From Octopus bimaculoides (taxonomy: Eukaryota): a DNA stretch of 45,991 nucleotides. This document shows positions 1,279 through 44,882 of this stretch, piece by piece. Position 1 is the stretch's first letter; each line of letters starts with the position of its first letter. Position numbers and translations under genes: made by a program. The stretch is from the NCBI RefSeq assembly GCF_001194135.2, contig NC_068993.1:43235119-43281109 (forward strand), given 5' to 3'. The notes under the pieces are model-generated. The model saw only the letters and a list, made by a program, of their open reading frames with translations, searched no databases and was not told the DNA's origin.

Positions 1279-2340
1279 ATGCCATATAAATTCAAAAGTG
1301 GCTCTTCAACAACAGAAACGACAAGAAATATTTGTTCTGTTTAAGTAAATGAAGTTTTAAGTGTCCTGACATACCAAGTTCTGCCAATATTCAGTTTCTG
1401 AAAACCAGAATTGAAGAAATTCCAAAGCATGCTGCCCGAGAGATAGCAAAACAGTTCAATGCGAGTCACATTTGAATCAAAATATCTTCATGATCTAAGA
1501 AAGGTGTAAAATCCTTGTCAGTGGGCCCCTCATCCTCTGACTGCTTCTCAGCTTTATTAAAGTGTTGGCCTCTGCTCGTCATTAAAGAACAGACTTTCTA
1601 CTGATCCTTTCCTGGGTAGGATCATCACAAGCAGTACCGGATTTGCCAGTGTGCTTAGGTGTAAAGGGCCCCTGATCAACGGGGCCCTGTCCAAGTTAGG
1701 GGGCCTCATAACGGGGCCCTGTCCACGTAAGGGGCTTCATAACTTAACTAGTACAGGGCCTCATTTGCCCTAAATCTGGTATTGATCACAAGTGATGAAA
1801 ATTAGGTTCTCTTTTATTAGAGCATACAATGAAACCGGAGAATTCATCTCTAAACAAGGACTACACCCAGAAAAAGTTATACTCTCTGTTTAGAGGGATA
1901 TAAAGAGTGACCGTTATCATGAAGTATTAAATCAAAACTAAATAATGCGAAGTATTGTCGTCAGTTGGAAGTATTGTAGAAAAAACTTTTCAGAAAAAGC
2001 GCCTATCATTGATCACTCATAAAGAGCTGTTGCTCTTACGCGATAATGCAAGATCGCATATTGCCCAAGTCATTCAGGAAAAGATTATAGCCCTAAATAT
2101 GAAAGTTTTGCTTTATTTGCCTTTCTATCCTAACCTTACTTCATTTGACTATCATTTTTTCAGATAATTGCAACAATATTTTGAGGGAAAGCAGTTTATA
2201 AATTGTGAAGAGGTTAAAAATGATATTGAGTGCTGCTTTCTTTCGAAACCTGAAGAATTTTACGCCCGAGGAATCGACAATTTGCCAACTAAATGGGATA
2301 TTAAGTTATCAATTACGAAGCGAAATATTATCTTGATTAA
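1279..2340 (+). mobile_element. Mariner (DD34D-type) transposase pseudogene, interrupted by a MITE
   Basis: Broken frames give WAPHPL (WVPHEL), FLGRIITSDE, LRDNARSH (HDNARPH), LPFYPNLTSFDYHFF (HPPYSPDLAPSDYHLF) and GIDNLPTKW; many stops and frameshifts. Confidence 0.9.
1632..1784. mobile_element. hAT-type MITE (153 bp) nested in the mariner
   Basis: TIRs CAGTACCGGATTT / AAATCTGGTATTG; perfect 8-bp TSD ATCACAAG (1624-1631, 1785-1792); internal 32-bp tandem repeat containing GGGGCCC. Confidence 0.85.
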
Positions 2341-2494
2341 CTACATCAATTATGACCAAAAGAAGCATTTCTTTCTTTCTCATCTTGAAATTCGACAAGA
2401 CTTTCTTTTCTACATGATGCGTGTGAGTGTGTGTGTGGATATATTCTTCTATAATATATATGGGTATGTCTATGTATAGATATATGTGTCAGTG

Positions 2495-3053: not shown

Positions 3054-3111
3054 NNNNNNNNNNCATTACATTACATTACACAATATTATTTTACATTGTA
3101 TTATAAATTAG

Positions 3112-3147
<36 letters not shown>

Positions 3148-3879
3148 AATACATTATTTATAGAGTATCATAAATTTTGTATGATAACAGCCGATTCATG
3201 TTAACGAACAGTTTCGTGCTAAAGGGCCATTCTAAACTTGAAAGGTTTTTTTAACATGAAACTATTTGGTAATATGATTCGGCTATTATAATACTGTATA
3301 AATGAGATACCCACAGTATTACACAATACATGAGTGTCTACAATTTTAACTTATGAAAAATTTTTGCGTAATTATACATACATATATATATATATTAGGA
3401 AAAGATGCTATCCATAACAAAGGTAACTCCTTATGTAATATTAGTTGCCTTTAGCAAGTATGACATAACAATGCTGCAATGATAAGCTTCTGTTTGTTTT
3501 TTTTTGTCTTTTGACGCAGTGAAGATTTAGTGAAGGAAAGACCAATAATATGTTTGATATAGTTTTCCAGTAAATTACTTAACTGTAAGAAAAAAACATC
3601 GTATATCTTAGAAAACTTCGTAATGGTTTTAGACAGCAATGACCTAGATCATGCGTTCATTTGATAGAGAGGAAACCATATAAAATTGTTTACTGCGATT
3701 GAGGATTTAGGTGTTCAGCGAAACATATTGTAGATTGGAACAGTTTTTAGTCACCTTTCGTATGAATATCCTGTAATTGTAGCTACTATACTGTTGTGTT
3801 TATGTTGTAGACATTCTCTTCGCAAGAACTTGAAATTATGTAGTAATATATGTAATGTTCTTCATTTACTGTAAAAAGA

Positions 3880-4078
3880 AATTTCAAATTTTGGCACAAG
3901 GCCAACGAGTTGGAGGAGGCGGATAGTCGACTACAGTATTTGACTTATTATATCGATCACGAAGGATAAAAGGCAAAGTAGGCTCAGACGGTACTTGGAC
4001 TCAGAACATAAAGAGCCAGAAGAAATTCCGCTAAATATTTTGCCCGGCTTGGTAACGATTCTGCTAGCTCACCACTTC
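3880..4078 (-). mobile_element. tRNA-derived SINE, family B
   Basis: Reverse-strand match to the family-B head and body seen at 23540-23760. Confidence 0.75.
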
Positions 4079-4350
4079 ATTTACTCTATATGATATGAAG
4101 GAAGAACTTCTGTAAAAGAAACATGACACACATGTATTTACGTTTACTGGAATATTTGCTCTTATCAGGAAATGAAATTACCAGATTAAATTTTATACGA
4201 TATTTAACATTAGGTATTTCATTTGCTTTTATTTTTAGTTTGGTCTGAAAGGAGGAGTCTGTTTCTATAGCTTCTGCAGGTTCTCCATGACCGATGACAT
4301 TGGCGTGTTTAAAATTCTTCTTGAAGAATTACAAGAAAAACATACATTTA

Positions 4351-4740
4351 GGCGCAGGCACGGTTGTGTAGCTAAGAAGCTTGCTTTAGAACCACACGAT
4401 TTTGGTTTCAGTCCCACTTTGTAGCACCTTCGGCAAGTGTCTGTTACTATAGCCCCGGACCGATCATTGCTCTGTGAGTGAATTTGGTTGACAGAAACTG
4501 TATCGAAGCCCGTCGTATGTGTTTTTGTTTCTGTGCTTATTTTCCCCTCTACAGCTTGACAACCGGTGCTAGTTTCTTCATGTCTCCATAACTCAACGGT
4601 TCGCCAGAAGAATTTCAAAGAATATGTACCAGGTTTTATAAATTAGCACTGGAGTCAGTCTGTTCGACTAAAAGCCCGTCAAAAGGCGGTGCCCCAGCAC
4701 GGTCACAGTGCAATGACTGAAACAAGTAAAGGATAAAAGA
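4351..4740 (+). mobile_element. tRNA-derived SINE, family A, full length
   Basis: tRNA-like head with B-box-like GGTTTCAGTCCC, GCACCTTCGGCAAGTG core and tail ATGACTGAAACAAGTAAAGGATAAAAG; homologous to 8786-9164. Confidence 0.85.
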
Positions 4741-4903
4741 TGCAAGGAAAAAATTCCATAACGGTGTTGCTCTGGGGAGAAAAGATTGGACTTAGTGATT
4801 ATTGCAAGGTAAGTGAAGCGGACACAATATAGATGACGAGCGAATCGGGATAGCCTGGGTGGAGCTATCACGTAACCAACAAGTTCCAAGGAGCTAATGC
4901 CAT

Positions 4904-4904
<1 letters not shown>

Positions 4905-4974
<70 letters not shown>
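4905..4974. repeat. (AGT)n microsatellite
   Basis: Direct sequence. Confidence 0.95.
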
Positions 4975-4975
<1 letters not shown>

Positions 4976-5825
4976 AAAAAGCAGATAGATTAGCTGTAAG
5001 TTTGTGGACCAGCAGTTAGAGCATGGTTGTTACTGAAAAACTATGAAAAAATCGTAATAAAAACGTGACTAGTTTTTTTGTTTTTTTTGTGAGGAGGTTA
5101 TATCTGTTACAAATATTTTGTAAGTTTATTTCATTGTGTTGGTACAAGCATAGCTCACAGCACACCATAAAGAGCCATACAAGTGACCAATACGCAATAA
5201 AGGCCATGCGAGTAACGAGAATACTATAAAGTACCATCCAAGTGATGAAAAAATGTTTGTCATACATTTTCCCAACGCTTGTGTCATTCACATTAACGGG
5301 TGAACGTAAGTTTAGAAACACGATAGCAGTTAGTTTATGATTTATCTATAAACCTGAACGTATTCCAAAGAGAGCTAAACTAACTAATCCACAGGCCATG
5401 ATCTCTAACAATCCCTTTAGTGTGAGGAATGTTTCTTCATATGTACAGCGTCTTGAGAAGCTATTGATTCTTGAGGGCCTCTGCGTCATTTTAAAAATTA
5501 CAAGTGAGAAACTTTACCGTGTATTTAACTAAGATAGAGAATATCAGGATTTACATAAGAACAAGCAGCTGTTAGGTCTGCAGTAAGTATTTCATCAACG
5601 AAACTGCACAGTGCCAGTGGCCATGACACGCAATTATCAATAATCGAATTCACCAAGCTCTAATTAGTATAATTTCTTCCTATAGGCAAACCCAGCTTTC
5701 TAGAATAAACGATTCGTTCTTTTAGATTGTCAAATGCAAATCCTATATAAGAAAAGTTACTTGTCTTCGAACAAACACATTTATCTCCTTTTAAAAGTAA
5801 GCATTGTGGAACGTTAAATTTTATT

Positions 5826-6492
5826 AATGACTTGTAGGCAAATGATATTTCGTTATACAACCATAATATCCTATAAAGTATATTGAATGTTTTTATAAGT
5901 CAACACCACATTCTACTGCGTTAGCAGTGCTCTTTACATTTATTTTGTTACGGTTATTTTTACAGAAATTATAGCCAGCAATGATTTGTTTTTGTTTTTT
6001 TTTTGCTGCAACGTTTCGTATCCAGACGTCAGATGTAAACAAACAATGAAATCGGAGACAAGATGAGGGATGAGTGTATATGTCATATTTCAGAGGGTTT
6101 TGCCCCTTCATCAGCACCCATATAACCAATTTTCGCCTCCGAACACATTGCTTATTTAGCCACCGCATCCAGTAGTGTTAAGTTATTGGATTTACTAATT
6201 TACATATTCCTGGGGCTGGTATCTAAACATTAATGACTTGTAAGCAAGCGGTATTTCGTTATGCAGCCATAATATACTATAAATTATATTAAATGTTTTT
6301 ATAAGTCAATATCACGTTCTACTGCGTTAGCAGTGCTCTATACATTATTTTGTCAAGGTATTTCAAAAGAAATTATAGCTAGCACTGATTTTTTTTTTTT
6401 TTGCTACAGCGTTTCGTATCGAGACGTCAAATTTAAACAAACAATGAAATCGAAGACAATAATGGGTAATGAGTATATATGCCCTATTTCGG
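5826..6492 (-). repeat. ~400-bp tandem duplication (about 1.6 units) carrying a hammerhead ribozyme
   Basis: AATGACTTGT at 5826 and 6232; identical TTCTACTGCGTTAGCAGTGCTCT in both units; ATGAGT at 6070 and 6469 (period about 400). Confidence 0.85.
6070..6121 (-). ncRNA. Complete type I hammerhead ribozyme
   Basis: Minus strand: ATGGGTG-CTGATGA-AGGGG-CAAAAC-CCTCT-GAA-ATATG-A-CATAT-A-CACTCAT. Canonical core, 7-bp stem I, 5-bp stem II, stem III, AUA cleavage triplet (cut between 6077 and 6076). Distal stem I helix CGGAGGCGA/TTGTCTCCG (6141-6133 with 6061-6053). Confidence 0.85.
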
Positions 6493-8084
6493 GAAATTTC
6501 TTAAGGAAGGGGAAGCAAAATAGTAAGTGGGGTAAAATGGGTAATTCGTATTTCCTAAGGATTTTTTTGTTCATCTGATGCATTTTGTTGCATCACCTTT
6601 TTTCTACTGTTGCGTCATCTTTGAGAATAAAAACTGGACAGCATAGTTGTCGCTGATCAAGTTGAGAGAGCTCATCAAATTGCACCCTTTTCTCAAGAAA
6701 TTTCACCTATTAGATTGCTAATAGAATTTCTAGATAATTTTTGGTATTTAACAATCAATATTCTTTTCTCTGTTGGATTCCAGGTCAATTTTTCCCACAC
6801 TTGTCTCTAATTCGATCATTTTCAGTTTTCAGAAGATGATGACTCAAGTGGGACAAAGTGAATAATGACTGATTTAAATTATATCGTCTCTTTAACGAGA
6901 TTGTGCGTAAATATATCAGGAAGATAACCACTTCAGCATATCATAAAGAAGCTATAGGGAATATTTTATGTTGAGTTTTTAGATTTAGTCGAGTTTCGTT
7001 AATTTCATATCATGTGTCATTTTTCCCTGATCCTCGTTCATTTGACCTAGATATTTTAAACGTATTAATACGTATGAGTCTTTTTACAAATGTCATTCTT
7101 GAGAACTGAAGAAGCAAAATTTACCTTATTCTGCCTTACTCATTTTGTTCCACCTAAATTTGTCTTTTGTACACTCAAAGAGAATGGAGAATATTTTCTG
7201 AAATAGTGTTCTGAATAAGTTTCAGGGCATTTAATGGATTTAATGGATGTATAGAAGATCATTTGCTTAGCTGATATAGTTTTCGTAAAGTAGTGAACAT
7301 TTGTAAAATATATTCTTTTTCCCAAAGCCAAGAATGCAGTAAATATTACTCATTGTGCCCCATCCCATACTGCTTTATTTACTTTTATGCCCAAATAATA
7401 TCTTAAATATCGTTTGCAATATTTCTTTGCGCTTTAAGCATGATATATTTTCATACTAATATTTATCGATAGGAGAATAGCTTTCACAGAAGCTGGATAT
7501 CTTTTCAACTGCAGCAAAGAAAATATAAATGTCGATACATTCAGTTTTCGTTATTCTATAGTTCGCAAAAGCTTTGTCAAACATGAAGATTTTCAGTTAT
7601 AACGTATTTATAACAATAATGTTTTATATATCAGCTTAGATTTGCATCTATGGACTCTTAAATTGAGTGCTAAGGCCTATTTTTAGTCTTGGCATTTATT
7701 ATGCATTTTGTAAATTCTTGTTTATGAGAAATAGCTTTGTTACTAATATTATAATCAAAAGCGTGCCACGTTTGTATTCTAAAATGTCTTCCGATATTCG
7801 CCTAACCATGTCTCAAAGATGGAATAAGATTAGTGTGATACGAAACAAGCTGACAGGTTGAACATAAATAATGACATTTAAGCAAAAATTCTTCCTATTG
7901 CATTGTTACTGGAAACTGCAAAATGTGAAATAAGCATAAGAAGAATATTCTGGGCATAACAAATATGAGGAACTGTTGTGATTTGGAAAAACCGAATATT
8001 AATCAAAAACCAGTGAAATAGAAACGTAACTGTAAACGCTCTCATGCTAATAATATAATACTAGATAAATGGATAGATAGACAG

Positions 8085-8133
<49 letters not shown>

Positions 8134-8785
8134 NNNNNNNNNNNNNNNNNNNNNNNNNNNNNNNNNNNNNNNNNNNNNNNNNNNNNNNNNNNNNNNNNNN
8201 NNNNNNNNNNNNNNNNNNNNNNNNNNNNNNNNNNNNNNNNNNNNNNNNNNNNNNNNNNNNNNNNNNNNNNNNNNNNNNNNNNNNNNNNNNNNNNNNNNNN
8301 NNNNNNNNNNNNNNNNNNNNNNNNNNNNNNNNNNNNNNNNNNNNNNNNNNNNNNNNNNNNNNNNNNNNNNNNNNNNNNNNNNNNNNNNNNNNNNNNNNNN
8401 NNNNNNNNNNNNNNNNNNNNNNNNNNNNNNNNNNNNNNNNNNNNNNNNNNNNNNNNNNNNNNNNNNNNNNNNNNNNNNNNNNNNNNNNNNNNNNNNNNNN
8501 NNNNNNNNNNNNNNNNNNNNNNNNNNNNNNNNNNNNNNNNNNNNNNNNNNNNNNNNNNNNNNNNNNNNNNNNNNNNNNNNNNNNNNNNNNNNNNNNNNNN
8601 NNNNNNNNNNNNNNNNNNNNNNNNNNNNNNNNNNNNNNNNNNNNNNNNNNNNNNNNNNNNNNNNNNNNNNNNNNNNNNNNNNNNNNNNNNNNNNNNNNNN
8701 NNNNNNNNNNNNNNNNNNNNNNNNNNNNNNNNNNNNNNNNNNNNNNNNNNNNNNNNNNNNNNNNNNNNNNNNNNNNNNNNNNNNN
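8134..8785. other. Assembly gap (first of nine large gaps)
   Basis: N-runs at 8134-8785, 10018-11000, 12018-12804, 18756-19014, 23153-23325, 30882-31119, 32028-32197, 41746-42195, 44400-44882; most are flanked by simple repeats. Confidence 0.99.
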
Positions 8786-9164
8786 TTGACTGCGGCCATG
8801 CTGGAGCACCGCCTTATAGTTGAGCAAATCGACCCCAGGACTTATTCTTTGGAAGCCTAGTACTTATTCTATCGATCTCTTTTGCCGAACAGCTAAGTTA
8901 CGGGGACGTAAACACACCAGCATCGGTTGTCAAACGATGTTGGGGGAACAAACACAGACACAAACATATACACACACATACATATATATATATACATATA
9001 TACGACGAGCTTCTTTCAGTTTCCGTCTACCAAATCCACTCACAAGGCTTTGATCAGCCCGAGGCTATAGTAGAAGACACTTGCCCAAGGTGCCACGCAG
9101 TGGGAATGAACCCAGAACCATGTGGTTGGTAAGCAAGCTACTTACCACACAGCCACTCCTACGC
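8786..9164 (-). mobile_element. tRNA-derived SINE, family A, well-preserved copy
   Basis: Head GCGTAGGAGTGGCTGTGTGGTAAGTAGCTTG...GGGTTCATTCCCACTGCGTGGCACCTTGGGCAAG, central microsatellite, tail cut by the gap. Confidence 0.9.
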
Positions 9165-9399
9165 ATATATTGATATCTTTTTATTAATATTTAGCAGAAG
9201 CAACACAGAGACTCACGGGCCGAGAAATATACGTATACTCATACTTAGAGTTCTATTTTAGCTGTTTGCTAGACCAAACCTATGTGGTGAGGGCTGTTAA
9301 ACCAAGATGATGTGAAGTGGTGAACGCTTGGAAAAATGAGCTTTGAGAAGAGACAGATAAAAGCACGTCTTGTCTTTAGGAAGAAAGCGGAAGAAGAGA

Positions 9400-9588: not shown

Positions 9589-11030
9589 TGATACCAATAG
9601 ATATGCTTGATTAAACGTAATGACACTTATAAATTATTGATGAATTTGTTTCTAGCAATAAGGGAAATACTGTTTTTCTTCTAAAATAAAAAAAAAACGC
9701 CGAGTTTTTTTTTTTTTGCTTGTTTTTTTTATTTGTTTTTTTCTTTTTTTGTTTTTTTTTTCTGCAAAGAGAATTCAAGATCTGACCATTCCTATATTAT
9801 TTCTTAAAGATATTAGCAACATAAAAAGGGATGAATCGTCTTCAAACTAGAATCAAAGCCACGTCATCGGAAACTTCACTCTGACTACTCAGAGTTATTC
9901 ATCTGTTTAATGAAACGTCAACGTTTGTCACAGAAAAAGACGTGGTATGATTTAGAAATTATAATCCAAATTCAATGTTATATATCTACCTCTGCTAATA
10001 TTCTGATGGAAGGTATCNNNNNNNNNNNNNNNNNNNNNNNNNNNNNNNNNNNNNNNNNNNNNNNNNNNNNNNNNNNNNNNNNNNNNNNNNNNNNNNNNNN
10101 NNNNNNNNNNNNNNNNNNNNNNNNNNNNNNNNNNNNNNNNNNNNNNNNNNNNNNNNNNNNNNNNNNNNNNNNNNNNNNNNNNNNNNNNNNNNNNNNNNNN
10201 NNNNNNNNNNNNNNNNNNNNNNNNNNNNNNNNNNNNNNNNNNNNNNNNNNNNNNNNNNNNNNNNNNNNNNNNNNNNNNNNNNNNNNNNNNNNNNNNNNNN
10301 NNNNNNNNNNNNNNNNNNNNNNNNNNNNNNNNNNNNNNNNNNNNNNNNNNNNNNNNNNNNNNNNNNNNNNNNNNNNNNNNNNNNNNNNNNNNNNNNNNNN
10401 NNNNNNNNNNNNNNNNNNNNNNNNNNNNNNNNNNNNNNNNNNNNNNNNNNNNNNNNNNNNNNNNNNNNNNNNNNNNNNNNNNNNNNNNNNNNNNNNNNNN
10501 NNNNNNNNNNNNNNNNNNNNNNNNNNNNNNNNNNNNNNNNNNNNNNNNNNNNNNNNNNNNNNNNNNNNNNNNNNNNNNNNNNNNNNNNNNNNNNNNNNNN
10601 NNNNNNNNNNNNNNNNNNNNNNNNNNNNNNNNNNNNNNNNNNNNNNNNNNNNNNNNNNNNNNNNNNNNNNNNNNNNNNNNNNNNNNNNNNNNNNNNNNNN
10701 NNNNNNNNNNNNNNNNNNNNNNNNNNNNNNNNNNNNNNNNNNNNNNNNNNNNNNNNNNNNNNNNNNNNNNNNNNNNNNNNNNNNNNNNNNNNNNNNNNNN
10801 NNNNNNNNNNNNNNNNNNNNNNNNNNNNNNNNNNNNNNNNNNNNNNNNNNNNNNNNNNNNNNNNNNNNNNNNNNNNNNNNNNNNNNNNNNNNNNNNNNNN
10901 NNNNNNNNNNNNNNNNNNNNNNNNNNNNNNNNNNNNNNNNNNNNNNNNNNNNNNNNNNNNNNNNNNNNNNNNNNNNNNNNNNNNNNNNNNNNNNNNNNNN
11001 ATATATATATATATTAGATAGATAGACTTA

Positions 11031-11495: not shown

Positions 11496-11557
11496 TGAGT
11501 GTTTGCTCGCACGTGTATGTAGATACACTTTGAGAATGATAAATAAAGGTATGTATA

Positions 11558-23539: not shown

Positions 23540-24205
23540 AAGGCGGCGAGCTGGCAGAATTGTTAGTACGCCGGGTAAAATGCTTAGCAGTATTTCGCCC
23601 GTCGCTACATTCTGAGTTCAAATTCTGCCGAGGTCGACTTTGCCTTTCATCCTTTCGGGGTCGATGAATTAAGTACGAGTGAAAATCTGGGGTAGGTGTA
23701 ATCAGCTAGTCCCCTTCCCTAAAATTTCAGGCCTTGTGCCTACAGCACAAAGGATTATTATCATTACTATAAGACGACGAACTGACAGAATCGTTAGCAT
23801 GCCGGACAAAACGCTTAGTGACATTTAACCCGTCTTTACATTCTGAATTCAAATTCTGCCGTGGTCATCTTTGCCGTTCGTCCTTTCGGGGTTGATGAAA
23901 TAGGTACCAGCTTAGCACTGGGGTCGATGTAACCGACTAGCCCCTTCCCCAAAATGTCAGGCCTTGTGCCTATAGTAGAAAGGATTATTGTAAGGCAGCG
24001 AGCAGTCAGGATCGTTAACGCGGCGGACAAAATTCTTAGTGATATTTATTCTGGCTCTTTACGTTCTGAGCTCAAACGCCACCGAGGTCTACCCTACTTT
24101 CATCCCTTTCGTGGTCGATAAAATAAATACCAGTTTGGCTCCGAAGTCAATGTAACCCACTTCTCTCTCTCCTTCATCAAAACTGCTGACGTTGTGCCAA
24201 AATTA
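23540..24205 (+). mobile_element. Three head-to-tail family-B SINEs (23540-23760, 23771-23990, 23992-24205)
   Basis: Repeated head (GGCGGCGAGCTGGCAGAAT..., TTCTGAGTTCAAATTC), body CCTTTCGGGGTCGAT and AAGGATTATT tails; the copies are mutually diverged. Confidence 0.9.
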
Positions 24206-24641: not shown

Positions 24642-24785
24642 GATGCAGACTTGGTTGCGTGGTTGAGACGTTCACTTTGGTTTCGACTTCAGTCTCATTG
24701 TGTGGCACCTTGGGCAAGTGTCTTCTACCATAGCCTCGGGCCGATTAATGCCCTGTGAGGGAATTTGGTATACGAAAACTATTTG
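24642..24785 (+). mobile_element. SINE family A head fragment
   Basis: GTGGCACCTTGGGCAAGTGTCTTCTACCATAGCCTCGGGCCGA. Confidence 0.8.
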
Positions 24786-25041
24786 AAGAGCTGTTTTAGA
24801 TAGGTACATAGAGAGAGAGGGGGGAGATAGATATCATGGCTGTGTGGTAAAAAGTCTGCTTCCCAACCACATGGTTCCAGGTTCAGCCCCACTACGTGGC
24901 ACCTTCGGCGAGTATCTTCTACTTTAGCTGAGCAAAGCCTTGAGTCAATTCAGTAGACGGAAACTGATAAAACCCGTCGTATATATGTACATATCTACAA
25001 AAACATATATACATATATATACACACACACACATACATACA

Positions 25042-27554: not shown

Positions 27555-27982
27555 TTTATCTTTTACTTGTTTCAGTCATTGGACGGCGGCCATTGCATGT
27601 GCACCACCTAGAAAGATTTTAATCGAACAAATCCATTCCAGTACTTAGGTTTGTTTGCTTGTTTGTTTGTTTTTTGTTCATTTTTTTCTTTCTTTTTTCA
27701 AATCTATCGATTTTTTGGCCGAAGAGTTAAGTTACGGGAATGTCGAAAAAAGAAACAACACTTGTTGTCAAGCGGTGGTGGAGGAAAAACACAAACACAA
27801 AGACACACACGTGTATACGACGAGCTTCCACACAGTTTCCGTCTAGTAAATTCACTCATAAGGCGTTGGTTGGCCCGGGGTTATAGTAGAAGACACCCAA
27901 GGTGTTGCGCAGTGGGACTGAACCTGAAACCACATGGTTGCAAAACGAGCTTTTTTTTTACCACACAGCTATGTCTGCGCCC
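27555..27982 (-). mobile_element. SINE family A, full length
   Basis: From the reverse tail TTTTACTTGTTTCAGTCATT to the head CACAGCTATGTCTGCGCC. Confidence 0.85.
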
Positions 27983-28145
27983 ACTGCTTTGTGTGGATGT
28001 GTGTGGGAGGGGGTGTAAGACTAGTTTCTAGATGTCGGTCAGAATTTCCGATCACAAGATTCAGTTGTTTGAATAACTAATCTACCAGTTTCATAGACGT
28101 ACCGTGTGAAATGACTGAGTATTTCAAAGGCATATGCATCTTTAG

Positions 28146-28909: not shown

Positions 28910-29112
28910 TTTATCTTTTACTTGTTTCAGTCATTAGACTGCGGCCACACTGGAGCACCGCCTTGAAGGGATTGGTTGAACAAATCGACCCCAAGTATTT
29001 ATTTTCTTTTGTCTATGCTAGGTATATCGAATCTCTATCGGATCTCTTTTTGCTGAACCGCTAGATACGGCGACGAGAAGAGACCAATATTGGCAGTCAA
29101 GCGGTGGCGGAT

Positions 29113-29143
<31 letters not shown>

Positions 29144-29307
29144 AGACGGGCTTCTTTCAGTATCCGTCTACCACATGCACTCACAAGGATTTAGTCGGTT
29201 CGGGGCTATAGTAGAAGACGCTTGCCCATGGTGCCGCGTAGTGGGACTGAACTCGGAACCATGTAGTTGGGAAGCAAACTTCTTACCACTCAGCCACGCC
29301 TGAGCCT
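28910..29307 (-). mobile_element. SINE family A, full length
   Basis: Colinear with 8786-9164. Confidence 0.9.
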
Positions 29308-29387
29308 ATATCATCACACTTAGCCATGTCACCACAATTAATCCCAAAATAAAATCAGAGTTCAGTATATAATTATCGATGTCACAA

Positions 29388-30397: not shown

Positions 30398-31221
30398 TTA
30401 CCTGTGCCTATAAATTGATTATATTTTCACTAGCGTTATGACCAGAGCTCTAAGACAAGGAACACAAACTCTGTAACGCCACGTCAACACACAACGACTT
30501 TTATGGCTTTTTTTTTATTTCGCTTAGCGCTGTTGACATCGCTTTAAAAGACACAAATGTCAACATAACATTTTTTCAGAAGGAAAAACATTTCTCCCTT
30601 CTGAATTCAAAGCTATTTTACAAGAATTCAGTCTTTCACAACAAAATGCTGCATCAACACGATAAATCTACAACCAGGAATAATAGAAATATTTCGTGTC
30701 AACGACGCGGATTCTACATAGTTCATCCACCCGCTAGGAGAACCAGGGAAATCTTATACAAATTACATGCTACAGTCTTGAAAGAAAAAAAAAAGGGGGA
30801 CTTATTAGATAAATTTCCTAGTGCCTGATAAAGAGAGAGGCTTGCTCAATTACGGTTGAGTACACATTCATACCCCACCCCNNNNNNNNNNNNNNNNNNN
30901 NNNNNNNNNNNNNNNNNNNNNNNNNNNNNNNNNNNNNNNNNNNNNNNNNNNNNNNNNNNNNNNNNNNNNNNNNNNNNNNNNNNNNNNNNNNNNNNNNNNN
31001 NNNNNNNNNNNNNNNNNNNNNNNNNNNNNNNNNNNNNNNNNNNNNNNNNNNNNNNNNNNNNNNNNNNNNNNNNNNNNNNNNNNNNNNNNNNNNNNNNNNN
31101 NNNNNNNNNNNNNNNNNNNATTAGCGACGGAAACAGTATTAATACCAAAAGATAATCTTTATATCCAACTTAGCATAGATGCTTCCGTTTTCCATGTTCT
31201 TACAAGGCCTCCATGTTAAGT

Positions 31222-31306
<85 letters not shown>

Positions 31307-33031
31307 ACAAAGAATGAAGCTGTATTATCAACGATTTGATTAGTTACATGTGTTCCAAACAGACTAGTACAACTAACTGATACACATTGCAAATATCAAT
31401 CGACCCTTACATATATAATCCACTAAAGGTCCAAAGAGAGAGAGGGATTATGTACCATACAACTAACTACTAAATATCATTATACTAAGAAAATCTGATA
31501 AGCATTTCTCTCCCACTATCTTTGACTGGGACACTGGTCAGTTAAGTACCAGTCTGTCTGTTTGAGTTTTACTGTTATGAACCCTACAACGTATACAAAT
31601 TTTGGCAAAAACATCATGAATGTTGGTAAAAATAGAATGGCACTTAATTTCCCTCTCCATTAAATGAGGTATCGATTAAATATGTATATTTCTATTTGCA
31701 ATGTACATCAATTGGTTGTGTCAATCTATCTGAAACGCATGCAGCTAATTAAATAGTTTATAATGTTTCTTCCTTTTTGTGTTTCCTTTCTATATTTTTT
31801 TTTCTAGTATATTTTATCAATATACCAAATTTATTTGGTGTTCGACTCTCAGATTTACAAACTAGACATGCTACAAGAAGTGAATGACAACCTATATAAA
31901 TTGCTGGGACCTTAATGAAACAATTTAGCAAGCTGATTTGTACAGAGTACTGAAAAATATATTCGTCTCGATTTATTTAATCCCTATTTTCTTTCACTTT
32001 ATATAAATATATATATATATATATATANNNNNNNNNNNNNNNNNNNNNNNNNNNNNNNNNNNNNNNNNNNNNNNNNNNNNNNNNNNNNNNNNNNNNNNNN
32101 NNNNNNNNNNNNNNNNNNNNNNNNNNNNNNNNNNNNNNNNNNNNNNNNNNNNNNNNNNNNNNNNNNNNNNNNNNNNNNNNNNNNNNNNNNNNNNNNNTAT
32201 ATATGTATATATATATATATACATGTATGTGTGTGTGTAGATATATACACACACACGAGTGCGTGCATACATATGTATACATACAAAAGTTGAACTCTGA
32301 AAAGAACAGACACGTGATCAATTTAGAGAATGCAGAATGCAGTGGATTTTACCTTTAAAGCTAAATGGAGAAGGCAACGGACGTGTTTTAGTCTTATGAG
32401 ACCTTCTCAGCAAAACATATTCACCTCAGCTGGCAAGGTCCATGTGATCAATTCACTCTATGGCATAAATAAGACACTACCTTCATTTTATTTCGCTGGC
32501 AAAACAATCCAATGAGGTGTTTTACCTTAGTCATATGCATGTGTGTGTACTTGTTATTAAAAATCTTTGGATCACTCCATTTTAATGCATGATTTGTGCA
32601 TTATTTATAAATTTAGAATAATATTCCTGCGGTCGACAAATTCAAAACAAGCTATTTCCAGCCATTTAGAATAAAGAACTTGAAGATAATTCTGAGAGTG
32701 AAAAAAATAATATTTAATCCATAATCGTTAGTTCGATAAAATATATTTTGTCGTACTAACGACTATTGATTAGATATTTTAAATTTATAATAATAAATGT
32801 TCGCTTTCTGATGTCTTTAACATGACATAATATATTCGTTATGAAAGCTGCAATCTTCGACTTTTAGAACAATCTCTATAGTTTTAGCATATAAAGACAG
32901 AAACTGTTATCTCTTTCACCTAACTAAACTAAGAACATTTACATGTGAGATAATAAGACCTGATAGATTAGAAAAATCTTATTTATTAGATCACTTGTAG
33001 CCTATGAATATCTTTAAATTTTTCTTTTCAG

Positions 33032-34573: not shown

Positions 34574-34968
34574 AAGTTGACCTCGGTGATATTGTAACTC
34601 AGAACGTTAAGGGCCAGAAGAAATACTGCTAAACGTTGTGTCCGACATGCTAACGATTCTGCTAGCTCCCCGCCCCGGACTGATGCACTAAAATATATAA
34701 GTATCGTATATTTCATCGGAAGTGCATTGATTTCAATACATAAGGAACATAAAGCAGCAAACTGACAGAATTGTTAGCACACCAGGCAAAATGCTCAGCG
34801 GCATTTCGTCCGTCTTTAGGCTCTATCTTCAAATTCTGCCGAGGTCGACTTTATCTTTCATCCTTTCGGGGTCGATAAATTGAGTACCAGTTGCCTACTG
34901 GGGTCGATCTAATCGCCTGGCCCCTCCCTGAAAATTTCGGGCCTTGTGCCTGGAGTAGAAAAGGATTG
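34574..34968. mobile_element. Head-to-head family-B SINE pair (34574-34674 minus; 34751-34968 plus)
   Basis: Inverted heads separated by about 76 bp. Confidence 0.8.
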
Positions 34969-35164: not shown

Positions 35165-35689
35165 GCTTGCTTCAGTCATTGGACTGCAGCCATGCTGGAA
35201 CACCGCCTTAAAAAGATTTAGTCGAACTAATTGATAGAGCCCAGTACTTAATCATTTTAAAATCTGCTAATTATTCTATCGACATTTTTTTTTTTTGATA
35301 AATGACTATGTTACAAGGACGTAAACAAACCAACACTTGTTCGAGTGGTGTGAGGACAAGCACAAAGGCACAAACATACACACAGGGGGTGATAGACAGA
35401 TACATACGAGTGTGTATATGTGTATACATGTACATATATATANNNNNNNNNNATATATATATATATAAAGCAGGCTTCCATACAGTTTCCATCTACCAAA
35501 TTCACTCTCAAAGCAATAATCGTCCCGGGGCTATAGTAATCTATATTATATATATTAGTATATATATAGTAAATATATAGTATAGATTACTATAGTAAAA
35601 ACTTGCCCAAGGTGCCACGCACTAGTATTAAACCCGAATCCACATGGTTGCGAAACGAACTTTTTAACCACACAGCCGTGTCTGCACCT
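35165..35689 (-). mobile_element. SINE family A with expanded internal microsatellite
   Basis: From the tail TTCAGTCATTGGACTGCAGCCATGCTGG to the head ACCACACAGCCGTGTCTGCACC. Confidence 0.8.
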
Positions 35690-36229
35690 ATGACAAATAA
35701 GAGAAACTGCAATGCATAGTAAACTGCAAATGACATTAAAACCATTATGACACACGCAGAGACACATCGAAGCATAGCAACGATGCATGGTCTCTGCGTT
35801 ATTCAAATAATGTATTTAACTGTTGACAGTTGAGAAGCTCATTGCAATTGTTAATCTTTGATTGCAGGAATAATCGTTTCTTTTGATACCAAGCGTACCG
35901 ACATTTCTATCAAAAGCCTTGGGTAGTAACTGCAAATTTTGTATCTGACATATGTCGAGACGTCTTTTAACAGACAAGGCTTGCCACGTCTATGTGCTGT
36001 TCTAATTTGTAAATGTAACGATTTACTGTCTAACTTATGAATGTATTCTCCGTTTGATTTCAATATCATAGTCCACACATGCACAGAAAGCCAGTAACGT
36101 TGCTATAAATGGATGTTTTATCCGACTGCTTCCGACAGAGCAAAGGAAGTTAAAAGCGAACAAGGGTCAGGCAGTAGTTATTGACAATTTGAAAGTTTCA
36201 AGTTGAATAATACCAATTACCAATAATTT

Positions 36230-37350
36230 AAGCGGCAAACTGGCAGAGTCACACATCCGTCGGACAAAATGCCTCATTGTGTTTGTTCTGAGTTTCTATG
36301 GTCTAAGTTCAATTCCCGCCCACGTCAAGTTTCCTTTTTGTCCATTAGAGGCCGATATAAAAATCAATGCCAATACAAGGTGGCGGATTGGTTAAGTTGT
36401 AAAAACGTCGGCCAGAGTGTCTTGTGGTGTTTCTTTTCCTTTTTGGCGTTCTGTGTTCAAATCTTACCATGGCCTGCAAGGGTAGTGAACTTAACTCATC
36501 GACCGTTTGGAATTTTGAATGCCCTGTTACGACAAAGTCCCAGATATCTTCCTCCCATCCTTCTTCGCACCAGTCACGGACGGCCTATAAAAGGTCGCTG
36601 GTTTGGCCTTTGTTCTCGACGAAAAGATAAAAAGAAATAATTATTACAATAATCCTTTCTAATTTTGGAACAAGACCAGCAATATAAAAGGGAGAAATTT
36701 GTGGATCAGATCGACTCCAGTACTTGAGTGACACTTTTTTTTTTTTTTTTTACCGACACCAAAACGATGAATAGCGAAGTTGACCTCGGCAGAATAAGAA
36801 CTCAGAACATAAAGAGACAGAAGAAATACTGTTATACATTTTATCCAACGTGCTGACGTTTCTGCCAACTCGCCTACTTATATAGTATTAATAATAATAT
36901 AATACCAGTCGATTACATCCACCCCAGTATTTAATTGGTACTTATTTCATCGACCCTGAAATGATAAAAGGCAACATCGACTTCGACGGAATTCAGAACG
37001 CAAAGACGGATGTAATGCCGCTAAGCACTTTTGTCCAGCGTGCTACCAATTTTGCCAGCTCGCCGCCTTACTTTTATAAAACCAAACTAGTAACTATTTA
37101 CATTTCCTATTTTCATTACTTGAAGAAGTATTTTTTCAGCGATTTGGTTTCGATTCGCGGTTGAAGCAATTTGATATTACGCGTATAATTTAATTAATTT
37201 AGATTTAGGAGGGTGTAGTTGATTAAACCAACCGCAGCACTAGACAAGTATTTATTTTATCAACCCCATAATGGTGAAAGAAGAAAGATGACCACGGCGG
37301 AATTTGAATTCAGAACGTAAGGAGCCATAACACACTCTAACATTCAACCA
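36230..37350. mobile_element. Cluster of five diverged family-B SINE pieces (plus 36230-36500; minus 36650-36875, 36903-37068, 37200-37350)
   Basis: Recurrent GGCAAACTGGCAGA, GACCTCGGC and AATTTGAATTCAGAACG motifs on both strands. Confidence 0.7.
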
Positions 37351-41700: not shown

Positions 41701-42603
41701 TGTGTGTGCGTGTGTGTGTGTGTGTATACATAACATACATATATANNNNNNNNNNNNNNNNNNNNNNNNNNNNNNNNNNNNNNNNNNNNNNNNNNNNNNN
41801 NNNNNNNNNNNNNNNNNNNNNNNNNNNNNNNNNNNNNNNNNNNNNNNNNNNNNNNNNNNNNNNNNNNNNNNNNNNNNNNNNNNNNNNNNNNNNNNNNNNN
41901 NNNNNNNNNNNNNNNNNNNNNNNNNNNNNNNNNNNNNNNNNNNNNNNNNNNNNNNNNNNNNNNNNNNNNNNNNNNNNNNNNNNNNNNNNNNNNNNNNNNN
42001 NNNNNNNNNNNNNNNNNNNNNNNNNNNNNNNNNNNNNNNNNNNNNNNNNNNNNNNNNNNNNNNNNNNNNNNNNNNNNNNNNNNNNNNNNNNNNNNNNNNN
42101 NNNNNNNNNNNNNNNNNNNNNNNNNNNNNNNNNNNNNNNNNNNNNNNNNNNNNNNNNNNNNNNNNNNNNNNNNNNNNNNNNNNNNNNNNNNNNNNCTGTA
42201 GTATCTAATATATTTAATTTGTTTACTCCCGTAATTGCCTCTGTGTGTGTGTGTGTGTGTGTGTGTGTTGTTTATTCATCAACCCCGGAAGGTTGAAAAG
42301 CAAAAGTTGACCCCGATTGTAATTGAACTCAAAGCACGAAATGCCAGAATACATAATACAAAGTATTTCGCCCGACGCTTTAACGCTTCAGTAAATTCAC
42401 CAATATTGGGATGGGTGTTCTTAGTATGCGAGAGTTTACGAAATTTGTAATAAATCAATGAGGTAGTTTGTTCTGGTTGAGGGGAAAGTATTAAAAGGGT
42501 GACTTGTTTTGCATGTTCAGTGGCTCATTGGAATCTATACAGCATCTCCAAAGATGAAGCAAACATTCTTTCGTATTACTAAACTATTATTTGCACATCG
42601 AAA

Positions 42604-43045
42604 GGTGGCTGATTGACCGTGAAAGAGTCGGAAAAATATACCTTGCGGTATGTATTTCTTTCTACTTTCAACGATCTGAATTCAAATCCCGCTGAAGTCA
42701 AGGTGGTTTTTCATCGTTTTGGCGTCGATAAAATAAAATGCGTTAAGTACCGGGGTCGATATAATAGATTAAAACCGTCCCCATCAAAACTTGCCGGACT
42801 TGTGCTTTGATAGAAAAAGTAGGTGCAGGCATGACTGTGTGGTTAAGAAGCTCGCTTTGCAATCACGTGGTGTCGGGTTCAGTCCCACTGCGCGGCACAT
42901 TAGCAATGTTTTCTACTATACTCACGTGCCGACCAATGCCTTCTGAATGAATCTGGAAGAGAGAAACTGTGTAGAAGCCCGTAGCGTATGTGGTATTCCA
43001 GCATGACCGTAGTCCAAAGACTAAAACAATTAAAAGACAAAAGAA
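42604..43045 (+). mobile_element. Family-B SINE (42604-42810) followed by an internally deleted family-A SINE (42821-43045)
   Basis: CTGAATTCAAATCCCGCTGAAGTCAA; GGGTTCAGTCCCACTGCGCGGCAC head joined to the CCAGCATGACCGTAGTC tail. Confidence 0.8.
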
Positions 43046-44050: not shown

Positions 44051-44141
44051 TACTAGTGTCTACATAGTTGATAATTTCCTTACTTCAAATCTAAAGCCTA
44101 GTAACTCTATCATAAATAGAATTAATACATTATTTATAGTT

Positions 44142-44375
44142 GGCGATCGGCGATATTCTTCGGCTCGAGAGTGACGTTGCTTGGGAACGCAGCCCAAAGC
44201 GGATGATAATCTCCATCCAAGGCTAAATACGGGAACGAGTCCGATAGCCGACAAGTACCGCGAGGGAAAGCTGAAAAGAACTTCAGAGAGAGAGTTGAGT
44301 TTAAGAGACCATGTAACCGCCAAGAGGTGCTGCCCTCGACTCGAACGAGACAACCCACCGAACTAAAACATATAT
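44142..44375 (+). pseudogene. 28S rRNA: 28S rRNA fragment(s), diverged and apparently permuted
   Basis: TTGCTTGGGAACGCAGCCCAAAGCGG...CTCCATCCAAGGCTAAATAC...CGATAG.CGACAAGTACCG.GAGGGAAAG.TGAAAAGAACTT..AGAGAGAGTT is the conserved LSU segment between D1 and D2. 44331-44373 resembles the 28S 5' end (ACCCGCTGAATTTAAGCATAT). Confidence 0.85.
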
Positions 44376-44882
44376 ATGTATGTATATATATATATATATN
44401 NNNNNNNNNNNNNNNNNNNNNNNNNNNNNNNNNNNNNNNNNNNNNNNNNNNNNNNNNNNNNNNNNNNNNNNNNNNNNNNNNNNNNNNNNNNNNNNNNNNN
44501 NNNNNNNNNNNNNNNNNNNNNNNNNNNNNNNNNNNNNNNNNNNNNNNNNNNNNNNNNNNNNNNNNNNNNNNNNNNNNNNNNNNNNNNNNNNNNNNNNNNN
44601 NNNNNNNNNNNNNNNNNNNNNNNNNNNNNNNNNNNNNNNNNNNNNNNNNNNNNNNNNNNNNNNNNNNNNNNNNNNNNNNNNNNNNNNNNNNNNNNNNNNN
44701 NNNNNNNNNNNNNNNNNNNNNNNNNNNNNNNNNNNNNNNNNNNNNNNNNNNNNNNNNNNNNNNNNNNNNNNNNNNNNNNNNNNNNNNNNNNNNNNNNNNN
44801 NNNNNNNNNNNNNNNNNNNNNNNNNNNNNNNNNNNNNNNNNNNNNNNNNNNNNNNNNNNNNNNNNNNNNNNNNNNNNNNNNN

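What the first reader, a model, noticed from the sequence alone, without database searches (positions are those of the whole stretch)
5826..6492. Intact type I hammerhead ribozyme in a ~400-bp tandem repeat: candidate cephalopod non-LTR retrozyme
Seen: a 52-nt minus-strand motif (6121-6070) with every canonical core nucleotide, a 7-bp stem I, a 5-bp stem II, a stem III (4 bp plus GAC loop, or palindromic for dimer use) and an AUA cleavage triplet. Stem I continues past an internal loop into a 9-bp distal helix, as in natural fast-cleaving type I HHRs. The motif sits in a non-coding, AT-rich unit repeated at about 400 bp. The upstream copy keeps only the 3' half of the ribozyme, and both units share an identical ACTGC-gtta-GCAGT hairpin. 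Established: metazoan non-LTR retrozymes are tandem monomers of a few hundred nt, each with a type I HHR, that yield linear and circular RNAs; Penelope pseudo-LTRs also carry HHRs. Inference: this is a relic copy of a retrozyme-like family. I do not know of one described from octopus, but I could not check.
Basis: partly seen in the sequence, partly recalled or inferred. Interest (0 to 1): 0.85.

Follow-up and report, generated by a model that had tools for sequence, protein, structure and literature searches.

The report
Hammerhead ribozyme relic in 400-bp repeat
A self-cleaving hammerhead ribozyme motif really is present inside a one-and-two-thirds-copy, 400-bp non-coding repeat. It looks like a decayed copy of the ribozyme-carrying mobile elements (retrozymes, relatives of Penelope-like elements) already known from many animals, so it is a plausible but fairly ordinary find.

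Summary
The motif is real. Minus strand 6121..6070 fits a type I hammerhead descriptor: CUGAUGA / GAAA / UA core, helix I 7 bp, helix II 5 bp, helix III 4 bp plus a GAC loop, cut site 6077|6076. It is the only such hit in the window. Random sequence of this composition gives about 40 per Gb at loose stem lengths and none in 250 Mb at these lengths.

Helix I continues into 10-bp and 13-bp helices. The resulting 125-nt hairpin has z = -5.15. Two copies are predicted to form a double hammerhead through a near-palindromic helix III.

Caveats:
- The "tandem repeat" is only 1.67 units: a copy truncated inside the ribozyme, then one full 406-nt unit, 13-16% diverged.
- No Rfam hammerhead model scores it, even at E <= 10.
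- The usually conserved G10.1-C11.1 pair is A-U, and helix III is all A-U.
- No other copy exists in the window.
- No relative could be reached in any collection, so copy number, covariation, expression and the "cephalopod" label are untested.
- No RT or GIY-YIG remnant lies within 3200-8130.

Best reading: an inert relic of a non-LTR retrozyme or Penelope-derived non-autonomous element, that is, a new member of a known kind. Interest is modest.

The parts
6070..6121 (-). Type I hammerhead ribozyme motif. Helix I 6121-6115/6076-6070; CUGAUGA 6114-6108; helix II 6107-6103/6096-6092 with loop CAAAAC; GAAA 6091-6088; helix III 6088-6085/6081-6078 with loop GAC; A17 = 6077; predicted cut 6077|6076.
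   Evidence: Sequence read. Only descriptor hit in the window. Shuffle and random-sequence expectations. Pair map. Not recognised by Rfam.
6036..6158 (-). Long imperfect hairpin that extends helix I: 2 bp (6127-6126/6068-6067), 10 bp (6142-6133/6061-6052) and 13 bp (6158-6146/6048-6036). It would hold the two ends of a cleaved monomer together.
   Evidence: RNAfold MFE -41.1 kcal/mol, z = -5.15, 0 of 200 shuffles as stable. The hammerhead-competent fold is -37.9.
5823..6228 (-). One full-length repeat unit (406 nt, 35% GC) with the complete hammerhead at unit positions 108-159. No ORF has homologues.
   Evidence: Self-BLAST and repeat finder. ORF list, protein search and Pfam. GC.
6229..6490 (-). 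5'-truncated upstream unit (262 nt). It starts at the position of G12, so it keeps only GAAA, a damaged helix III and the 3' strand of helix I (6490-6469). Relic cut-site equivalent at 6476|6475.
   Evidence: 84% identity to 6091..5823 over 270 columns. Substitutions: 21 transitions, 13 transversions; p = 0.13, JC 0.14.
5915..5928 (-). Conserved 5-bp hairpin ACTGC-GTTA-GCAGT (as written on the + strand) in the full unit. An identical copy lies at 6321-6334 in the truncated unit.
   Evidence: Exact pattern search: two matches, 0.01 expected.
5984..6004 (-). Internal A-rich tract of the unit (A10-C-A5-C-A3). Its counterpart, A15, is at 6389-6403 in the truncated unit. It is internal, not a 3'-terminal poly(A) tail.
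   Evidence: Sequence read and copy alignment.

Best explanation
This is a decayed, partial-dimer insertion of a small non-autonomous retroelement that carries a type I hammerhead ribozyme. In other words, it is a non-LTR retrozyme, the class now argued to derive from Penelope-like element terminal repeats.

How the family would work (inferred from the known class):
- Multimeric minus-strand transcripts cut themselves 3' of the A in ...AUA|C at each ribozyme.
- Cutting most likely uses pairs of neighbouring ribozymes. The weak, near-palindromic helix III (AUAUGACAUAU) would zip into one 10-bp intermolecular helix, a double hammerhead.
- The roughly 400-nt monomer ends (5'-OH and 2',3'-cyclic phosphate) are held together by the 32-36-bp extension of helix I. 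A host tRNA ligase joins them into a circle.
- A retroelement reverse transcriptase copies the circle or multimer. Insertion then gives tandem pieces with arbitrary start and end phases.

At this locus:
- The upstream unit was truncated inside the ribozyme, at G12, so only one complete hammerhead remains.
- A transcript could be cut once at most (6077|6076). No unit-length or circular RNA can arise from this locus alone.
- The two units differ by 13-16%, so the insertion is old and probably inert.

Shown here: the motif, its predicted folds, the repeat architecture, and the absence of coding capacity and of neighbouring RT/EN remnants. Inferred: self-cleavage, dimer use, circularisation, retro-mobilisation, and the existence of other copies.
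For: - Complete type I descriptor fit with core CUGAUGA/GAAA/UA. This also satisfies the CUGANGA/GAAAY/RUH rule used by the field (PMC7229834 supplement). It is the only hit in the window.
- Chance expectation is 0.003 per window at looser stems and none at these stems in 250 Mb.
- Helix I continues into 10-bp and 13-bp helices. The 125-nt region has z = -5.15, 0 of 200 shuffles.
- The dimer cofold gives the double-hammerhead form with an intermolecular helix III: -89.1 kcal/mol against 2 x -41.1.
- The unit is about 400 bp, head to tail, 33-35% GC, with no homologous ORF. This matches the published class: 150-450 bp, low GC; mussel units are 350-390 bp.
- The upstream copy's 3' strand still pairs with the single 5' strand over 36 bp. 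Both substitutions in helical positions are C to U opposite G.
- Helix sizes of 7/5/4 bp are canonical-like. The minimal PLE type has helix I 4-5 bp, helix II 7-8 bp and no helix III.
- A 5'-truncated copy followed by a full copy is the partial-tandem arrangement typical of PLE-type insertion.
- No RT or GIY-YIG signal in six frames of 3200-8130.
Against: - No Rfam hammerhead family scores the region: not at gathering score, and not at E <= 10 on 1.6 kb or on 121 nt.
- A covariance model built from four experimentally validated retrozyme hammerheads gives only 10.1 bits. That is E about 1 over the window, rank 4, although it aligns in the right register.
- The 10.1-11.1 pair is A-U, whereas G-C is described as highly conserved. 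The 15.2-16.2 pair is U-A. Helix III is all A-U. The hammerhead fold is 3.2 kcal/mol above the MFE.
- Only one locus and 1.67 units are available. There is no second copy in 46 kb, so there is no covariation evidence.
- The part of the ribozyme present in both copies is no better conserved than the rest (6 differences in 27 nt).
- The whole 400-nt monomer is only marginally more stable than shuffles (z = -2.0).
- No relatives were found in any reachable collection. This is uninformative, because the source genome is evidently not in them.
Confidence: 0.68

Rival explanations
1. It is a terminal repeat (pLTR), or a solo or deleted remnant, of an autonomous Penelope-like element rather than a separate non-autonomous retrozyme family. 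The hammerhead would then be the ordinary PLE ribozyme. The partial tandem would be the usual PLE insertion structure with the ORF lost.
For: - PLE insertions are typically a 5'-truncated copy followed by a full copy, forming pLTRs that carry hammerheads.
- Retrozymes and pLTRs are reported to be phylogenetically intermingled.
- Octopus genomes, if that is the source, carry Penelope families.
- A possible short duplicated 'tail' lies 75 nt upstream, at 6551-6536.
Against: - No RT or GIY-YIG remnant in any frame of 3200-8130 at E <= 1.
- The unit is only 406 nt, with the two copies directly abutting.
- Metazoan PLE hammerheads are usually minimal: no helix III, helix I 4-5 bp, helix II 7-8 bp, an extra base after A9, and G10.1-C11.1. 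This motif has none of those features.
Confidence: 0.15
2. It is a chance hammerhead look-alike inside a local 400-bp tandem duplication of ordinary non-coding DNA. There would be no ribozyme family and no self-cleavage.
For: - Single locus, no covariation, no Rfam hit.
- The two core-adjacent pairs (10.1-11.1 and 15.2-16.2) are the A-U/U-A types favoured by an AT-rich background, not the conserved G-C/C-G.
- Extrapolating the simulation (about 40 per Gb at stems 5,3,3, multiplied by roughly 0.38 for each of 5 extra pairs) gives about 0.3 look-alikes per Gb at this stringency. A genome-wide reader could therefore meet one.
- Another unrelated tandem duplication exists in the window at 23521-24161.
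Against: - The joint occurrence of a stringent motif, a unit of retrozyme size repeated head to tail (about 3% of this window is in such duplications), and a 123-nt helix I extension with z = -5.15 is far less likely than any one of them alone.
- Genuine hammerhead elements number hundreds to many thousands per genome in animals that have them.
Confidence: 0.12
3. It is a structured hairpin repeat with some other role, such as a small-RNA precursor or satellite. Its apical region would only coincidentally resemble a hammerhead.
For: The strongest statistical signal is the long hairpin. The unit also has a second conserved small hairpin.
Against: - Given a hairpin, the apical 38 nt still has to supply CUGAUGA, a 5-bp helix II, GAAA, a helix III closed by A-U, and UH flush against the stem. 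My estimate is about 1e-9 per hairpin (inference).
- There is no Rfam miRNA or snoRNA match near any gathering score.
Confidence: 0.05

Closest known systems
Metazoan non-LTR retrozymes (Cervera & de la Pena, NAR 2020, PMC7229834), e.g. the Mytilus galloprovincialis 350-390-bp repeats
   Same: - Type I hammerhead in a head-to-tail, AT-rich, non-coding unit of a few hundred bp (406 nt here).
- Helix I closed by a long self-paired region.
- Short, near-palindromic helix III.
- Arbitrary phase at the array ends.
- No LTR or ORF.
   Different: - Only 1.67 units and one complete ribozyme.
- A-U instead of G-C at 10.1-11.1.
- Helix I, II and III of 7, 5 and 4 bp, against the canonical 6, 4 and 1-2 bp.
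- No sequence similarity to the published coral, mussel or axolotl units beyond the core.
- No evidence of copy number or circRNA.
Penelope-like element pLTR hammerheads (Cervera & de la Pena, MBE 2014, PMC4209133)
   Same: - Type I hammerhead associated with a retroelement repeat.
- Partial-tandem insertion architecture.
- Presumed dimeric action.
   Different: - PLE motifs are usually minimal: no helix III, short helix I, long helix II, an extra base after A9, and conserved G10.1-C11.1.
- They flank an RT/GIY-YIG ORF.
- None of this is seen here.
Newt/axolotl satellite 2 hammerheads (HHR_Amex1/2)
   Same: - Units of 330-350 bp.
- Weak helix III that works through a double hammerhead.
- HHR_Amex2 also has a non-G-C pair (a U.U mismatch) at the base of helix II and cleaves slowly as a monomer.
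- The A-rich 6-nt loop 2 (CAAAAA in Ax330, read from its published sequence) resembles CAAAAC here.
   Different: - Vertebrate elements with tens of thousands of copies.
- Their helix III is 1-2 bp with a strictly palindromic loop. Here it is 4 bp with an odd 3-nt loop, which gives one A.A mismatch in the dimer.
Schistosoma Sm-alpha hammerhead-bearing non-autonomous retrotransposon
   Same: Canonical type I hammerhead in a short, non-coding, repeated retroelement of an invertebrate.
   Different: Sm-alpha is described as dispersed and SINE-like with a very active ribozyme (my recollection). Here there is a single decayed locus of unknown activity.

Membership tests
Hammerhead ribozyme, type I | Catalytic core C3-U4-G5-A6-N7-G8-A9, G12-A13-A14, A15.1-U16.1, H17 | tested here: met
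   CUGAUGA 6114-6108, GAAA 6091-6088, U6078, A6077.
Hammerhead ribozyme, type I | Three helices around the core, with helix I open-ended and helices II and III capped | tested here: met
   Helices of 7, 5 and 4 bp. Descriptor hit. The enforced hammerhead fold is -37.9 against an MFE of -41.1 kcal/mol.
Hammerhead ribozyme, type I | Conserved G10.1-C11.1 pair at the base of helix II | tested here: not met
   A6107-U6092. The alternative register with a bulged A gives G.U. The feature is described as highly conserved in PMC4209133, but the axolotl HHR_Amex2 family has U.U there.
Hammerhead ribozyme, type I | Match to the curated covariance model (Rfam Hammerhead_1 and related families) | tested here: not met
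   No hammerhead family is listed at gathering score or at E <= 10, even on 121 nt.
Hammerhead ribozyme, type I | Loop 1 / loop 2 tertiary contacts | tested here: inconclusive
   An internal loop (UUAU / C) follows helix I, and loop 2 is the 6-nt CAAAAC. Loop 2 resembles CAAAAA of axolotl Ax330. The specific contacts cannot be judged from one sequence.
Hammerhead ribozyme, type I | Mg2+-dependent self-cleavage at H17 | not testable with these tools
   Needs in vitro transcription of 6160..6036 as a monomer and as a dimer.
Non-LTR retrozyme | Head-to-tail repeats of about 150-450 bp, each with a type I hammerhead | tested here: inconclusive
   Period 399-406 bp but only 1.67 units. The second unit is cut inside the ribozyme. 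TRF reports no array. The draft assembly has 13 N runs, so a collapsed array cannot be excluded.
Non-LTR retrozyme | [quoted passage not shown] | tested here: not met
   There is one complete motif. The upstream copy lacks CUGAUGA and helix II.
Non-LTR retrozyme | Low GC, with no ORF, LTR, PBS or PPT | tested here: met
   33-35% GC. The longest ORF is 91 aa with no homologue and no Pfam hit. PBS and PPT were not specifically searched.
Non-LTR retrozyme | Highly self-paired monomer RNA | tested here: inconclusive
   The 125-nt hammerhead arm has z = -5.15, but the whole 400-nt monomer has z = -2.0, with 4 of 100 shuffles as stable.
Non-LTR retrozyme | Multi-copy family in the genome, with covarying hammerheads | not testable with these tools
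   There is no other copy in the window. The source genome is absent from the reachable collections.
Non-LTR retrozyme | Expression as linear and circular RNAs of unit length | not testable with these tools
   No transcriptome access.
Penelope-like element pLTR | Repeat flanks an ORF with RT and GIY-YIG endonuclease domains | tested here: not met
   Six-frame Pfam scan of 3200-8130 at E <= 1 finds no RVT or GIY-YIG. The search is limited by the N gap at 8134-8785.
Penelope-like element pLTR | Minimal hammerhead: no helix III, helix I 4-5 bp, helix II 7-8 bp, an unpaired base after A9 | tested here: not met
   Helices of 7, 5 and 4 bp, with helix III present.

The most novel reading that the evidence does not exclude
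The source genome (possibly a cephalopod) harbours a live, so far undescribed retrozyme family. Its hammerhead would natively use A10.1-U11.1 and U15.2-A16.2 next to the core, and the family would produce abundant circular RNAs of about 400 nt. This locus would be one dead copy of it.
Probability: 0.2. Interest if true: 0.45.

Novelty: new member of a known kind. Interest (0 to 1): 0.3.

Why it matters
If the family is real and multi-copy, it would add a lineage to the list of animals with hammerhead-bearing circRNA retroelements. It would also add a natural variant with A-U at the normally G-C 10.1-11.1 pair, which bears on the proposed metal site at A9/G10.1. The element class, its mechanism and its link to Penelope-like elements are already described, including in molluscs. 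This locus itself is a truncated, diverged relic. It therefore matters mainly as an annotation and as a seed sequence for a genome-wide search.

Tried and rejected
- **Rfam.** Three runs (whole window at gathering score; 1.6 kb and 121 nt at E <= 10) gave no hammerhead. The only hit was an LSU rRNA fragment elsewhere.
- **Own covariance model.** I built it from the four validated retrozyme hammerheads in the PMC7229834 supplement. It over-fits their stem sequences. The candidate aligns in register but scores 10.1 bits, E about 1, so the test is uninformative.
- **Reaching other copies through ORF calls.** The 91-aa ORF across the ribozyme has no relatives among 5.8 billion proteins.
- **Pattern and back-translated scans.** Scans of metagenome, viral and prokaryote genome contigs found nothing.
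- **Identifying the organism.** None of the following names the organism, so 'octopus' stays unverified.
  - The LINE RT remnant's exact product is not on record.
  - Its best relatives are 70% identical proteins on unnamed ENA contigs, plus one Amphimedon entry.
  - The abundant SINE-like repeat has no protein hits.
  - ARAGORN finds no tRNA.
- **A third, decayed ribozyme piece upstream (6582-6536).** A 16-nt repeat is suggestive, but the alignments are not better than shuffles.
- **Target-site duplication.** Only AAATTT is found near both ends, which is too short and AT-rich to count.
- **Bacterial promoter/terminator scan.** Irrelevant for a eukaryotic locus.
- **Poly(A)-tailed SINE reading.** Rejected, because the A-rich tract is internal to the unit and the array does not end at it.

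Full report
**1. The observation**

On the minus strand, 6121..6070 reads AUGGGUG-CUGAUGA-AGGGGCAAAACCCUCU-GAAA-UAUGACAUAU-A-CACUCAU. A descriptor scan required four things:
- CUGANGA;
- a capped helix II flush with the core, followed by GAAA;
- a capped helix III closed by A15.1-U16.1, followed by H17;
- a helix I formed by the two flanks.

The scan finds this motif and nothing else on either strand of the 46-kb window.

| Element | Coordinates |
|---|---|
| Helix I | 6121-6115 / 6076-6070, 7 bp, one G.U |
| Helix II | 6107-6103 / 6096-6092: A-U, G-C, G.U, G-C, G-C; loop CAAAAC |
| Helix III | 6088-6085 / 6081-6078, four A-U pairs; loop GAC |
| Cleavage site | A17 = 6077, cut 6077\|6076 |

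Chance expectation:
- First-order Markov shuffles of the window give 0.003 hits per window at minimal stems (5,3,3) and 0 of 300 at (7,5,4).
- 250 Mb of random sequence of this composition gives about 40 per Gb at (5,3,3) and none at (7,5,4).
- Extrapolation (my estimate) gives roughly 0.3 per Gb at this stringency. The motif alone therefore sits near the genome-wide chance level for a multi-gigabase genome. The context has to carry the rest.

**2. Context**

Helix I does not stop at 7 bp. After a small internal loop it continues through three further helices:
- 2 bp;
- 10 bp (6142-6133 / 6061-6052);
- 13 bp (6158-6146 / 6048-6036).

Folding results:
- The 125-nt segment folds at -41.1 kcal/mol against -25.0 +/- 3.1 for shuffles (z = -5.15, 0 of 200).
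- Enforcing the hammerhead fold costs 3.2 kcal/mol.
- Two copies co-fold into the classical double hammerhead. AUAUGACAUAU forms a 10-bp intermolecular helix III with one A.A mismatch. The energy is -89.1 against 2 x -41.1 kcal/mol.

**3. The repeat**

- 6490..6229 matches 6091..5823 at 84% over 270 columns. Substitutions alone give p = 0.13, JC 0.14, with 21 transitions and 13 transversions.
- The 137 nt at 6228..6092 occur once. The period is 399-406.
- The locus is therefore a 5'-truncated unit that begins at the position of G12, followed by one full 406-nt unit: 1.67 units in all.
- TRF does not call it.
- There is no other copy, even a diverged one, in the window.
- The array is 33% GC and the unit 35%.
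- Its longest ORF (91 aa) has no homologue and no Pfam domain.
- The hairpin ACTGC-GTTA-GCAGT is identical in both units.
- The A-rich tract is internal to the unit, so this is not a poly(A)-tailed SINE.
- Six-frame Pfam scanning of 3200-8130 shows no reverse transcriptase or GIY-YIG remnant.

**4. What speaks against a bona fide, active ribozyme**

- No Rfam hammerhead family reports the region, even at E <= 10 on 121 nt.
- A covariance model built from four experimentally validated retrozyme hammerheads (PMC7229834 supplement) aligns it in the right register. It gives only 10.1 bits, not significant over the window. That model is dominated by the stem sequences of its four seeds, so I count this as uninformative.
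- The 10.1-11.1 pair is A-U, whereas G-C is called highly conserved (PMC4209133). The 15.2-16.2 pair is U-A, which is allowed by the GAAAY/RUH rule. Helix III is all A-U.
- A natural precedent for a non-G-C base of helix II exists. It is the axolotl HHR_Amex2 family, with about 60,000 motifs, a U.U mismatch there, and slow cleavage as a monomer.
- The portion of the ribozyme present in both units is no better conserved than the rest of the unit.

**5. What it most likely is**

Size, base composition, lack of coding capacity, head-to-tail arrangement with arbitrary phase, and a type I hammerhead embedded in a long self-paired arm all match metazoan non-LTR retrozymes (PMC7229834; mussel units are 350-390 bp).

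Helix sizes of 7/5/4 bp are canonical-like. They do not match the minimal Penelope pLTR type, which has no helix III, a short helix I, a long helix II and an extra base after A9.

A truncated copy followed by a full copy is also the usual Penelope-type insertion product. [quoted passage not shown] The two readings therefore overlap.

By that preprint's own criterion (two consecutive complete hammerheads), this locus is not an active retrozyme. With one complete ribozyme it could be cut once at most, and it cannot give a circle. Its 13-16% inter-unit divergence marks it as old.

**6. What could not be done**

The decisive test is genome-wide copy number, covariation and association with RT/EN ORFs.
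- the window's own ORF products are not on record;
- relatives of its LINE remnant are only 70% identical and sit on unnamed ENA contigs;
- its abundant SINE-like repeat has no hits;
- pattern and back-translated scans of the metagenome, viral and prokaryotic collections were empty.

The cephalopod attribution is therefore unverified. The literature held here describes Penelope-like elements in octopus genomes but no hammerhead or retrozyme survey of cephalopods.

**7. Verdict**

| Reading | Probability |
|---|---|
| Relic of a retrozyme or PLE-derived hammerhead element | about 0.68 |
| Same thing, but a pLTR remnant of an autonomous PLE | about 0.15 |
| Chance look-alike in a local duplication | about 0.12 |
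| Other hairpin RNA | about 0.05 |

It is a new member of a known kind at best, and interest is modest (0.3).

Noticed in passing
window 4349-4521, 8968-9170, 11551-11691, 24688-24994, 27777-27985, 29103-29314, 35473-35690, 42818-42992: A SINE-like interspersed repeat of about 170-200 bp, present in at least eight copies at 74-87% identity on both strands. ARAGORN finds no tRNA-like gene, and its ORF translation has no protein hits.
   Followed up: partly
window 23521-24161, with relatives at 34760-34967 and 36754-37069: A second tandem duplication (period about 233 bp, 75% identity) of a dispersed repeat. It has no hammerhead descriptor hit.
   Followed up: partly
window 22114-22807 (-): Remnant of a LINE-type reverse transcriptase C-terminal region (zf-RVT-like, ORF 22416-22748). 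It is 76% identical at the DNA level to TE-rich contigs of ENA assemblies ERZ25066843 and ERZ25073763. The only named relative is from Amphimedon.
   Followed up: partly
window 44093-44265 (+): An isolated fragment of eukaryotic LSU rRNA (67.8 bits, model positions 104-358), 134 bases from the N gap at 44400-44882. It could be an rDNA pseudogene fragment or an assembly artefact.
   Followed up: no
window 6582-6536 (-): About 75 nt upstream of the truncated unit, ATACGAATTACCCATT repeats the unit's ATACTCATTACCCATT (14 of 16). It is preceded by CAGATGAA...GAAATA, which is reminiscent of a decayed hammerhead core. It may be a third degraded piece or a Penelope-type duplicated 'tail'. The alignments are not better than shuffles.
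   Followed up: partly
window 2168-2476 (+): The ORF translation (…FYARGIDNLPTKWD…) looks like the C-terminal end of a mariner-family transposase. This is my reading only; Pfam gave no hit.
   Followed up: no
window-wide (N runs at 3054, 8134-8785, 10018-11000, 12018-12804, 18756-19014, 23153-23325, 30882-31119, 32028-32197, 41746-42195, 44400-44882 and others): There are 13 runs of N (4235 bases), mostly flanked by microsatellites. This is a draft short-read scaffold, so tandem arrays may be collapsed or truncated.
   Followed up: no
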